DNA from: Ascoidea asiatica JCM 7603
Taxonomy: Eukaryota > Fungi > Ascomycota
Direction: 5' to 3'
Assembly (NCBI GenBank): GCA_001600695.1
Contig: BCKQ01000004.1
Location: forward strand, 271,708-335,707
DNA: 64,000 bases
In this document: in pieces, positions 21,522-24,089 of the stretch
Numbering within the stretch: the first letter of the stretch is position 1
Layout: every line of letters begins with the position of its first letter
Made by a program: the position numbers and the translations under genes
Notes under the pieces: generated by a model
What the model was told of the DNA's origin: nothing
Database searches by the model: none
The model's input: the letters and a program-made list of their open reading frames with translations, nothing else

Positions 21522-22306
21522 ATGACTTTACAAAATCCTATAATAAAGGGAATCATCTTTGATATGGATGGGACTCTTTGTATGCCTCAAACTTGGATGT
21601 TTGGTATGTAGTTTCTTTTTTATTTTCTACATTTTTAATACTAAACATTTCTTATAGTGAAATATAATACTAATAAATTTTTTTTAGGTGCTATGAGAGA
21701 AGTATTAGGAATAGAAAAAGGAATTGATATAATTCATCATTTAGAATCAATCTCAGATCCAGATTTAAAATTATTTAAAAATAATCAAATTTTAGATATT
21801 GAAAAAAAAGCAATGAATGAAATGCAACCAAGAGATGGTTTAAATCAATTAATGTTATATATTGATGAAAAAAATATTAAAAAATCAATATGTACAAGAA
21901 ATAATTTAAACCCAGTTTTATATTTAAATTCAAATTTCTTACCAAATATTGAATTTTTTCCAATAATTACAAGAGAATTTAATCCCCCAAAACCTTCTCC
22001 AAAACCAATTTTACATATTTTATCAAATTGGAATTTAAATTCAAAAAATATAATCATGGTTGGTGATTCAATTGATGATATGAAAGCTGGAAAAAGTGCA
22101 GGTTGTATAACATTTTTAATAACAACTGATGCAAATCATCATTTAAAAACTGCAAAAGAAACTGATTTTGTCATTGACTCGTATGTATTTATTAGTTTAT
22201 TTAATCAATCTCTCACTCATTTATGTTTCAATACTAACTTCTTTTTTTTTATTTAAGTCTAACTGAATTACTCCAAATATTAAAACAATGGGATAATAAT
22301 GCTTAA
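21522..22306 (+). CDS. HAD-like hydrolase (YOR131C-like), 3 exons: 21522-21603, 21688-22180, 22258-22306
   Basis: Exon 1 supplies HAD motif I (IIFDMDGTL). Both introns start GTATGT, have TACTAAT/TACTAAC branch points and end in TAG/AAG. The spliced C-terminus is DFVIDSLTELLQILKQWDNNA*. Exon 2 has KPSP and MVGDSIDD. Confidence 0.88.
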
Positions 22307-22361: not shown

Positions 22362-22892
22362 TTAATCACATTTTTTAATAAATTCACCAGTTCTTCCACC
22401 ATTTTTATAAATCAATTGAATATCAGAAATTATCATTCCTTTATCAACAGCTTTACACATATCATAAATTGTAAGAAGTCCAATATTCACTCCAGTTAAT
22501 GCTTCCATTTCAACACCAGTTTTACCATCACAATTAACTTCGCATATTAATTTTATAGAGCCAAATTTACTAAAATTTTTTAAAATTTTAAATTCACTTT
22601 TAATTTTTGTTATTTGAATTGGATGACAAAGCGGTATTAATTCTGATGTCTTTTTAACACCCATAATACTAGCAATTCTTGAAATTGAAATTACATCACC
22701 TTTAGGATTAGACATTGAAAATATTGATTCAATTACTTCTTTTGTACTAAATGATATTATTCCAGTTGCTATTGCTTTTCTAGAACTTATAATTTTGTTA
22801 TTAATATCGACCATATTTGCTTCACCATTTAAATTTAAATGAGAAAATTCAGAATATCTATTTTCATTTTTATTGTCATTACTATTATTCAT
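22362..22892 (-). CDS. MOCS1B: Cyclic pyranopterin monophosphate synthase MoaC/MOCS1B (probably expressed as exon 22362-22927 of a MoaA-MoaC fusion)
   Basis: SHLNLNGEANMVDI, KGDV, KKTSELIPLCHP and GKTGVEMEALT..LTIYDMCKAVD. Confidence 0.93.
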   Translation of the reverse strand: MNNSNDNKNENRYSEFSHLNLNGEANMVDINNKIISSRKAIATGIISFSTKEVIESIFSMSNPKGDVISISRIASIMGVKKTSELIPLCHPIQITKIKSEFKILKNFSKFGSIKLICEVNCDGKTGVEMEALTGVNIGLLTIYDMCKAVDKGMIISDIQLIYKNGGRTGEFIKKCD

Positions 22893-22927
22893 ACTTTTAG
22901 TAGATGATAAAAATCTCCTTTTAAAAA

Positions 22928-23002
22928 CTAAAATTAGTTAGTATTTAGTAATTAAAGAAATATAGTTGAACGTATGAACAAAAAAAATTAAAAATAATCA
23001 AC
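22928..23002 (-). other. Predicted 75-nt spliceosomal intron spanning the MoaA stop codon
   Basis: On the minus strand: GGT G|GTTGAT...TACTAAC (22937-22943) taattttAG|TT TTT AAA AGG. Removing it joins MoaA and MoaC in frame. Confidence 0.75.
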
Positions 23003-24089
23003 CACCAATTAATATCATTGGTCTATTTTTCATATTTTTTAAATCTTCAATATCTGCATGACTTTCTTTCTTATTTTTAACAGCATTATTTATAGCAATT
23101 AATAATTTTTCTTCTTGATTTGATCTAATTAAATCTCTTAAATTTAATTCATTATTATCAAATAAACAAACTTTTAAATTTCCATCAGAAGTAATTCTTA
23201 ATCTTGTACAAGTTGAACAGAAATGATCAGAAATTGAAGAAATAAAACCAAAAGTACCTTTAAAACCATTAATTTTGAAATTTTTTGAAGTATCACCATA
23301 ATTTGAATCTAATTTAGAAATTTGATTTGGAAATTCTTTTAAAATTTTAGTATACATTTCATCTTTTGAAACAAATTTTTTCATTGAAAATTTATTACCA
23401 TCAAAGGGCATAAATTCAATAAATCTAACTTGGATTTCATTTAATTTAGTTAAATTTATAAAATTAATGATTTCATCATCATTTAAATTTTTCATTATAA
23501 CAACATTAATTTTAATTTTTGGTATACCAAGATTAATAGCAGTATTTAAAGAAGAAATAACATTATTAAATCCTTTTCTTCTTGTAATAAATTCAAATTT
23601 TTCTTCAATTAAAGTATCAAGACTTAAATTCAAACCTGATAAACCATTTTCAAATAATTTTGGTAATTTTCTATTTAAAGTTATACCATTTGAAGTTAAA
23701 CAAATTTCTTTTAAATTATTATTTGAATTTTTTTTAAAATTATTTAATTTCTGAAAAATTTCAATAATATCTTTTCTTATAGTTGGTTCACCACCAGTTA
23801 ATCTAATTTTTGAAATACCATTTGAAATAAAAATTTTTGATAAATAAATTATTTCATCAGTTGTTAAAAGTTTTTCATTTGAAGATAAATTTATACCATT
23901 TTCAGGCATACAATACTTACATCTAAGATTACATCTTTCAGTTAATGAAATTCTAAGATAATTATGATTTCTACCAAAACTATCAGTTAAAAAATCAGTG
24001 AAAGGTTTCGCAGTTTTTATTGATTTCCATCTTGGATCTGTATTTGTTGAAATATTTCGAATTAAGAATTTTTTAATAACTGAATTCAT
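22998..24089 (-). CDS. MOCS1A: GTP 3',8-cyclase MoaA/MOCS1A (radical SAM)
   Basis: YLRISLTERCNLRCKYCMP (CX3CX2C), RLTGGEP, FCSTCTRLR..KVCLF and C-terminal RPMILIGG. The N-terminus is presequence-like. Confidence 0.96.
   Translation of the reverse strand: MNSVIKKFLIRNISTNTDPRWKSIKTAKPFTDFLTDSFGRNHNYLRISLTERCNLRCKYCMPENGINLSSNEKLLTTDEIIYLSKIFISNGISKIRLTGGEPTIRKDIIEIFQKLNNFKKNSNNNLKEICLTSNGITLNRKLPKLFENGLSGLNLSLDTLIEEKFEFITRRKGFNNVISSLNTAINLGIPKIKINVVIMKNLNDDEIINFINLTKLNEIQVRFIEFMPFDGNKFSMKKFVSKDEMYTKILKEFPNQISKLDSNYGDTSKNFKINGFKGTFGFISSISDHFCSTCTRLRITSDGNLKVCLFDNNELNLRDLIRSNQEEKLLIAINNAVKNKKESHADIEDLKNMKNRPMILIGG

What the first reader, a model, noticed from the sequence alone, without database searches (positions are those of the whole stretch)
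22362..24089. Splice-switched bicistronic MoaA/MoaC (MOCS1-type) locus: a hidden intron deletes the MoaA stop codon
Seen: MoaA ends ATT GGT GGT TGA, and MoaC lies 105 bp downstream in the same frame. The spacer has a perfect TACTAAC branch point and a TAG acceptor (22928). A donor at the GT of the last Gly codon (GTTGAT at 23002; GTGGTT at 23005 has the same phase) gives the in-frame fusion ...MILIG-VFKRRFLSSTKS-MNNS.... The donor is non-consensus, whereas the three other introns I identified in the window use GTATGT. Known: MoaA/MOCS1A needs its C-terminal Gly-Gly for activity; human MOCS1 and Neurospora nit-7 make an A protein and an AB fusion by alternative splicing; S. cerevisiae lacks the Moco pathway. 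Inference: intron retention yields active MoaA, while splicing yields an AB fusion that supplies MoaC. One weak donor would then set the stoichiometry of both enzymes. Functional alternative splicing is rare in intron-poor budding yeasts, and gene callers would annotate two separate genes.
Basis: partly seen in the sequence, partly recalled or inferred. Interest (0 to 1): 0.85.

Follow-up and report, generated by a model that had tools for sequence, protein, structure and literature searches.

The report
Splice-switched MoaA/MoaC gene in yeast
One budding-yeast gene very probably makes both enzymes of the first step of molybdenum-cofactor synthesis by keeping or removing a small hidden intron, a switch known from humans and Neurospora that is conserved in other yeasts but usually mis-annotated there as two separate genes.

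Summary
Observation confirmed. MoaA (24089-22998, minus strand) ends GGT GGT TGA. A TACTAAC branch point (22943-37) and a TAG acceptor (22928) follow, and a phase-1 donor joins MoaA in frame to MoaC. The branch motif is at chance level in the window alone, but orthologues decide it. In 12 of 13 A-stop-C loci (window included) the first AG after the branch point restores the frame from a phase-1 donor, although the A/C frame offset varies. An MPP-like R-x-[YFL]-S-[TS] motif follows the acceptor in 10 of 13 (0.3 expected), here upstream of any in-frame ATG. The likelier donor is in the FIRST Gly codon (23005; GT/GC in 12 of 13; same position as the tested Neurospora nit-7 donor), not 23002. Model: retention gives active MoaA-GG; splicing gives a 549-aa fusion from which mitochondrial processing frees MoaC. 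It is a new member of the known MOCS1/nit-7 kind, not found described for budding yeasts. Five orthologues have a second donor 4 nt downstream that would create Gly-Gly-stop.

The parts
22998..24089 (-). MoaA / MOCS1A ORF (GTP 3',8-cyclase, 363 aa), the product of the intron-retaining mRNA; both Fe-S cysteine motifs and the C-terminal Gly-Gly are intact
24045..24089 (-). Putative N-terminal mitochondrial presequence (aa 1-15: basic, no acidic residues, ends R-N-I-S-T)
   Evidence: seen in sequence; function inferred from NIT-7A/MOCS1A
22998..23006 (-). Gly-Gly-stop codons GGT GGT TGA, overlapping the splice donor(s)
23000..23005 (-). Preferred weak 5' splice site G|GTGGTT in the first Gly codon (phase 1)
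   Evidence: GT/GC at this position in 12/13 yeast loci; same position as the N. crassa nit-7 donor at nt 1460; better U1 pairing than 23002
22997..23002 (-). Alternative, less likely donor G|GTTGAT in the second Gly codon (also phase 1, in frame)
   Evidence: GT present in only 5/13 loci
22928..23005 (-). Predicted 78-nt intron (53% T) holding the MoaA stop and a second in-frame stop at 22940-22938
   Evidence: length and composition match the neighbouring HAD intron (77 nt, 55% T)
22937..22943 (-). Branch point TACTAAC (branch A at 22938)
   Evidence: exact TACTAAC in 10/13 loci, one mismatch in the other three
22928..22930 (-). 3' splice site TAG, the first AG after the branch point
22893..22927 (-). 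Exon-2 linker upstream of the first in-frame ATG, encoding FKRRFLSSTKS; MPP-like motif R-F-L-S-S at 22916-22902
   Evidence: motif in 10/13 loci against 0.28 expected by shuffling
22362..22892 (-). MoaC / MOCS1B domain (cPMP synthase), with conserved KKTSELIPLCHP, EMEAL and YDMCKA motifs; single copy in the genome

Best explanation
This is the yeast's MOCS1/nit-7 gene: one transcription unit with one alternatively retained intron. A weak donor inside the first Gly codon (23005) is used only part of the time. Retained: translation stops at TGA 23000 and gives MoaA with the essential C-terminal Gly-Gly. Spliced (23006 to 22927): both Gly and the stop are lost, giving a 549-aa fusion (...RPMILI-VFKRRFLSSTKS-MNN...) whose MoaA part is inactive. 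The fusion is imported into mitochondria by MoaA's N-terminal presequence and cut at the exon-2 R-F-L|S-S site, releasing a mature MoaC of about 181 aa. Shown here: sequence anatomy, conservation, open frames. Inferred: that splicing occurs in this species, the donor choice, import and cleavage, any regulation of the ratio.
For: Phase: in 12/13 loci the first AG after the branch point needs a phase-1 donor to reach the MoaC frame (the second AG in the 13th), although intron lengths run 52-252 nt and A/C offsets are 0, 1 or 2; nominal binomial P about 2e-5. Linker: MPP-like motif in 10/13 against 0.28 expected; upstream of any in-frame ATG in the window, K. phaffii, Pachysolen, O. haglerorum, B. 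naardenensis and one Logan yeast. In K. phaffii, O. haglerorum and C. boidinii the annotated MoaC ATG lies inside the domain, after the conserved LTH motif. Independent annotations of Pachysolen, B. naardenensis and most filamentous-ascomycete fusions join right after RPMILI with a G-initial codon (D/G/V/A), i.e. at the Gly1 donor; one 3.2-kb Logan contig carries such a contiguous fusion (P0240). In N. crassa the tested intron is nt 1460-1696 while the A CDS is 1-1467, so it starts at base 2 of the first Gly codon; NIT-7B alone is not imported and does not complement, and NIT-7AB is cleaved after import (PMC7232280). The genome holds MoeA, MoaE, an XDH-like gene and two MOSC proteins, and one MoaC only.
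Against: GTGGTT is not enriched upstream of branch motifs in 264 kb of this genome, whereas GTATGT is (5 vs 3.9 and 10 vs 3.2). O. haglerorum has GGA GGA TGA, with no GT/GC donor in the Gly codons. No yeast fusion from a Logan contig turned up. In this species the ATG at 22892 has A at -3 and would give a complete MoaC domain. The 13 loci are related, so the P values are nominal, and the motif pattern was chosen after seeing the sequences.
Confidence: 0.85

Rival explanations
1. Same switch, but the donor used is GTTGAT in the second Gly codon (23002), the first reader's preferred site, alone or alongside 23005.
For: In frame; some annotated fusions read ILIG-D (e.g. Saitoella P0120).
Against: GT at this position in only 5/13 loci against 12/13 for Gly1; weaker pairing to the textbook U1 5' end (-2.6 vs -4.4 kcal/mol); N. 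crassa uses Gly1.
Confidence: 0.15
2. Two independent genes: MoaC has its own transcript (promoter in the MoaA 3' end) and starts at ATG 22892; the branch point and acceptor are a relic or belong to a 5' UTR intron.
For: Good ATG context and a complete domain from 22892; most yeast annotations split the locus. Separately expressed O. parapolymorpha CNX1 and CNX2 (the latter from an internal MVAIH start) supported slow nitrate growth in engineered Yarrowia (PMC8456426). O. haglerorum has an ATG right after the stop that, spliced from A|GTTATT, gives a stand-alone MoaC with a presequence-like N-terminus.
Against: The product from 22892 starts MNNSNDNKNE, with no presequence. The conserved MPP-like motif upstream of that ATG would be untranslated. 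Phase conservation is unexplained. NIT-7B alone does not complement in N. crassa.
Confidence: 0.1
3. Unspliced bicistronic mRNA, with MoaC made by stop-codon readthrough or by reinitiation at 22892.
For: Same frame in this species; A. nidulans cnxABC was once discussed as bicistronic.
Against: A second in-frame stop lies at 22940-22938; the frame offset is 1 or 2 in seven orthologues; reinitiation after a 363-codon ORF is inefficient (established knowledge).
Confidence: 0.04

Closest known systems
Neurospora crassa nit-7 (NIT-7A / NIT-7AB)
   Same: Single intron starting in the first Gly codon; retention gives A with Gly-Gly, splicing gives AB; exon 2 encodes linker plus B; B is released after mitochondrial import (PMC7232280).
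   Different: Much more compact here (78-nt intron against 237; the linker before the MoaC core is under 30 aa). N. crassa's minor donor downstream of the stop has no clear counterpart. This genome shows no nitrate reductase domain, so the nitrate-linked control of the splice ratio cannot carry over as is.
Human MOCS1 (type I bicistronic; type II/III MOCS1AB)
   Same: Stop-bypassing splicing removes the GG motif and fuses A to B; the linker carries a mitochondrial processing site that frees B (bioRxiv 10.1101/429183; PMC9026282).
   Different: Humans use alternative splicing of exon 9 in a 10-exon gene, and the 95-aa linker is itself an import signal. Here it is simple retention of the only intron found; independent import by the short linker is untested.
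Functional intron retention in budding yeasts (PTC7, FES1, MDH, SRC1; PMC7491326)
   Same: One gene gives two functional proteins by retention or alternative donors in an intron-poor genome.
   Different: Here the switch selects between two enzymes of one pathway. That survey does not mention MOCS1 or molybdenum.

Membership tests
MOCS1/nit-7 splice-switched locus | MoaA ORF ending in Gly-Gly-stop, followed on the same strand by a MoaC ORF | tested here: met
MOCS1/nit-7 splice-switched locus | Splice signals that remove the stop and GG and join A to B in frame | tested here: met
   phase conserved in 12/13 loci
MOCS1/nit-7 splice-switched locus | Both mRNA forms exist in vivo | not testable with these tools
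MOCS1/nit-7 splice-switched locus | Linker between A and B with a mitochondrial processing site | tested here: met
   met as a sequence motif only: R-F-L-S-S here, 10/13 loci against 0.28 expected; cleavage itself not tested
MOCS1/nit-7 splice-switched locus | Mitochondrial import of A and AB, and release of B | not testable with these tools
   presequence-like N-terminus seen; localisation needs experiment
MOCS1/nit-7 splice-switched locus | No other source of MoaC; rest of the Moco pathway and a client enzyme present | tested here: met
   single MoaC; MoeA, MoaE, XDH-like and MOSC present; no PF00174 match
MoaA radical SAM GTP 3',8-cyclase | CxxxCxxC, auxiliary CxxCx13C and C-terminal GG | tested here: met
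   Pfam PF04055 + PF06463
MoaC cPMP synthase | Full PF01967 domain with conserved active-site motifs | tested here: met
   profile positions 1-136 of 136, E 5e-50; motifs

The most novel reading that the evidence does not exclude
The MOCS1 switch is conserved across Moco-retaining budding yeasts, unreported, and runs on interchangeable solutions at one codon pair. (i) Retention versus a weak GT/GC donor in Gly1 (this window and six other loci; K. phaffii among them). (ii) Two donors 4 nt apart sharing one acceptor, where GG|GT creates Gly-Gly-stop from exon-2 bases: 5 of 5 loci whose second Gly codon is GGG, and in three of them unspliced RNA does not end in GG. (iii) In Ogataea, either a GA donor or a newly independent MoaC with its own ATG exon. 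It would be among the oldest functional alternative-splicing events in Saccharomycotina, and would mean that yeast CNX2/MoaC has been annotated and engineered in a truncated form lacking its import route.
Probability: 0.6. Interest if true: 0.6.

Novelty: new member of a known kind. Interest (0 to 1): 0.48.

Why it matters
Functional alternative splicing is rare in budding yeasts, and this event is missing from the published survey I could read (PMC7491326). It would give a compact, genetically tractable model of the human MOCS1 switch (molybdenum cofactor deficiency type A) in yeasts such as K. phaffii. It corrects gene models: MoaC is annotated from internal ATGs in Komagataella, Ogataea and C. 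boidinii. It also bears on engineering: O. parapolymorpha CNX2 was expressed from the internal MVAIH start with near-zero mitochondrial-targeting scores, and evolved strains gained N-terminal mutations in CNX1 or CNX2 (PMC8456426), as a truncated gene model would predict. The mechanism itself is known, which caps the surprise.

Tried and rejected
One own-genome search with the MoaC ORF by reference followed it, and the free-text reading named the 7-base donor; apart from these no letters of that stretch went to a search tool afterwards. The joined spliced model was never searched; it was only translated in local scripts. The junction was probed with stored orthologue proteins P0016 and P0121, which found no yeast fusion from Logan contigs (uninformative, because such contigs break at or drop isoform bubbles). 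Gray and Nicholls 2000 is not held. Paper searches found no description of MOCS1 splicing in budding yeasts; subscription papers are not covered. Rejected: readthrough (second stop, variable frame); the TACTAAC count as evidence in itself (chance level); upstream in-frame GT donors inside MoaA (e.g. 23062, 23257, 23398), possible in frame but not conserved at a common position in the 60 nt compared across orthologues.

Full report
Observation. On the minus strand a 363-aa MoaA ORF (24089-22998) ends ATT GGT GGT TGA, and a 176-aa MoaC ORF (22892-22362) follows in the same frame. Pfam gives Radical_SAM + Mob_synth_C and a full-length MoaC domain. Both Fe-S cysteine motifs of MoaA and the conserved MoaC motifs are intact. 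The spacer holds TACTAAC (22943-22937) and, as the first AG after it, TAG (22930-22928). GT at 23005 (first Gly codon) and at 23002 (second Gly codon) both give an open A-C fusion. The branch point's own TAA is a second in-frame stop, which excludes simple readthrough. TACTAAC alone is at chance level in this AT-rich window (6 against 4.4 expected), so the claim had to be tested on orthologues.

Context. The genome (20.3 Mb, 71 contigs; window about 26% GC) is a budding yeast: the best named MoaA hits are Candida arabinofermentans, C. boidinii and Pachysolen at 61-62%. From memory, size and GC fit Ascoidea asiatica; I did not test this. It has one MoaC, MoeA/gephyrin, MoaE, a 1507-codon xanthine-dehydrogenase-like frame and two MOSC proteins, and no nitrate reductase/sulfite oxidase domain was found. 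The pathway therefore looks functional, probably serving purine oxidation (inference). The neighbouring HAD gene has a clear intron (22181-22257, + strand; GTATGT...TACTAAC...AAG; 77 nt, 55% T) whose removal restores a normal C-terminus. The proposed intron is 78 nt and 53% T. In 264 kb of this genome GTATGT is enriched upstream of branch-like motifs (10 vs 3.2) while GTGGTT and GTTGAT are not, so either donor is atypical, as a retention switch requires.

Orthologues. I fetched twelve other loci: K. phaffii, Pachysolen, C. arabinofermentans, C. boidinii, O. haglerorum, Sugiyamaella, B. naardenensis, Ambrosiozyma and four unnamed yeast-like Logan contigs. All have MoaA, a short spacer of divergent sequence with a TACTAAC-type branch point, then MoaC. 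The A/C frame offset is 0, 1 or 2 and the predicted introns run 52-252 nt. Yet in 12 of 13 loci, window included, the first AG after the branch point reaches the MoaC frame from a phase-1 donor; in Sugiyamaella it is the second AG (nominal P about 2e-5, loci not independent). The sequence after the acceptor carries R-x-[YFL]-[ST]-[TSQ] in 10 of 13 loci against 0.28 expected from shuffling the same linkers (pattern chosen after inspection, and two of the three misses have near-matches). This resembles the R-3 mitochondrial processing motif (established knowledge). In the window and five other loci it lies upstream of any in-frame ATG, so only a spliced mRNA can translate it. In K. phaffii, O. 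haglerorum and C. boidinii the annotated MoaC start lies inside the domain, past the conserved LTH motif.

Which donor. The first Gly codon offers GT in 11 loci and GC in one; the second Gly codon offers a phase-1 GT in only 5. In N. crassa the tested intron starts at nt 1460 and the A coding sequence ends at 1467 including the stop, which places the donor at base 2 of the first Gly codon (PMC7232280). Most annotated fungal fusions, including Pachysolen and B. naardenensis, read RPMILI followed by D, G, V or A. Pairing to the textbook U1 5' end also favours 23005. I put 23005 first; 23002 cannot be excluded without reads.

Mechanism. Retention gives MoaA with the Gly-Gly terminus that catalysis needs (PMC9026282). 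Splicing gives a 549-aa fusion with an inactive A part. By analogy with N. crassa, where NIT-7B alone is neither imported nor complementing and NIT-7AB is cleaved after import, and with human MOCS1AB, whose linker holds a processing site, the fusion carries MoaC into mitochondria and is cut at R366-F-L|S, leaving about 181 aa. Anatomy and conservation are shown; splicing in this species, import, cleavage and any regulation of the ratio are inferred. In N. crassa the unspliced form rises with Moco demand; nothing here tests that.

Variants seen in relatives. In all five loci whose second Gly codon is GGG (Pachysolen, Sugiyamaella, three Logan yeasts) a second GT lies 4 nt downstream. Splicing it to the same acceptor yields Gly-Gly-stop, because exon 2 begins N-TAA or N-TGA. 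GGG is only about 5% of Gly codons in this genome. In three of the five, unspliced RNA does not end in GG, and in Blastobotrys it reads straight through into MoaC, so active MoaA there should need splicing. That is independent support for an intron at this place. The window lacks this second donor and is of the retention type. O. haglerorum (GGA GGA TGA ATG) has no GT/GC donor in the Gly codons. It needs either a GA donor or a downstream A|GTTATT donor that, with the ATG after the stop, gives a stand-alone MoaC with a presequence-like start. This is unexplained and shows the arrangement can change.

Limits. The joined model was translated only in local scripts and the joined search step was left out. 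Searches with stored orthologue fusions found no yeast spliced contig, and one non-yeast-like Logan contig with a contiguous Gly1-type fusion (P0240).

Comparison and verdict. It works like, and by every sequence test belongs to, the MOCS1/nit-7 family of stop-bypassing loci; the in-vivo features are untested. I found no paper describing it in budding yeasts. The survey of Saccharomycotina alternative splicing does not mention it, and yeast engineering work treats CNX1 and CNX2 as two genes, with CNX2 starting at the internal MVAIH (PMC8456426). Earlier scan notes record the same stretch and the linker motif; these are repeats of the idea, not independent evidence. Verdict: real, a new member of a known kind, confidence 0.85, interest 0.48.

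Noticed in passing
L003, L008, L015, L020, L021 (MoaA end): Where the second Gly codon is GGG, a donor 4 nt downstream of the Gly1 donor, spliced to the same acceptor, creates Gly-Gly-stop (5 of 5): a likely two-donor version of the switch.
   Followed up: partly
L007:3078-3235 (Ogataea haglerorum): No GT/GC donor in the Gly codons (GGA GGA TGA ATG). An ATG right after the stop plus a downstream GTTATT donor would give an independent MoaC with a presequence-like start; the alternative is a GA donor.
   Followed up: partly
L009:3141-3149: The Gly1 donor is GC (GCGGTT) in this unnamed yeast: a probable GC-AG intron.
   Followed up: no
P0018 / P0250 (Blastobotrys): The unspliced frame reads through IGGLVQ... 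into MoaC with no stop, so MoaA with a terminal GG could only come from splicing. DNA not fetched.
   Followed up: no
PMC8456426; P0265 vs P0259: The engineered O. parapolymorpha CNX2 starts at the internal MVAIH (missing LTH and the linker), and the DL-1 CNX1 model (334 aa) is 27 aa shorter at the N-terminus than other Ogataea models (361 aa); both scored near zero for mitochondrial targeting.
   Followed up: partly
window 22181-22257 (+): The HAD hydrolase gene has a 3'-proximal 77-nt intron with an AAG acceptor. The spliced gene stops near 22306, about 55 bp from the convergent MoaC stop, so the 3' UTRs probably overlap.
   Followed up: yes
L003:1-1952: In Pachysolen the locus sits head to head with nitrate reductase (about 550 bp apart); neighbours differ in the other yeasts.
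   Followed up: no
G000 C3:549701, C4:428889, C16:298103, C2:1165178, C2:2305523: XDH-like, MoeA, MoaE and two MOSC genes are present, but no nitrate reductase/sulfite oxidase domain was found.
   Followed up: partly
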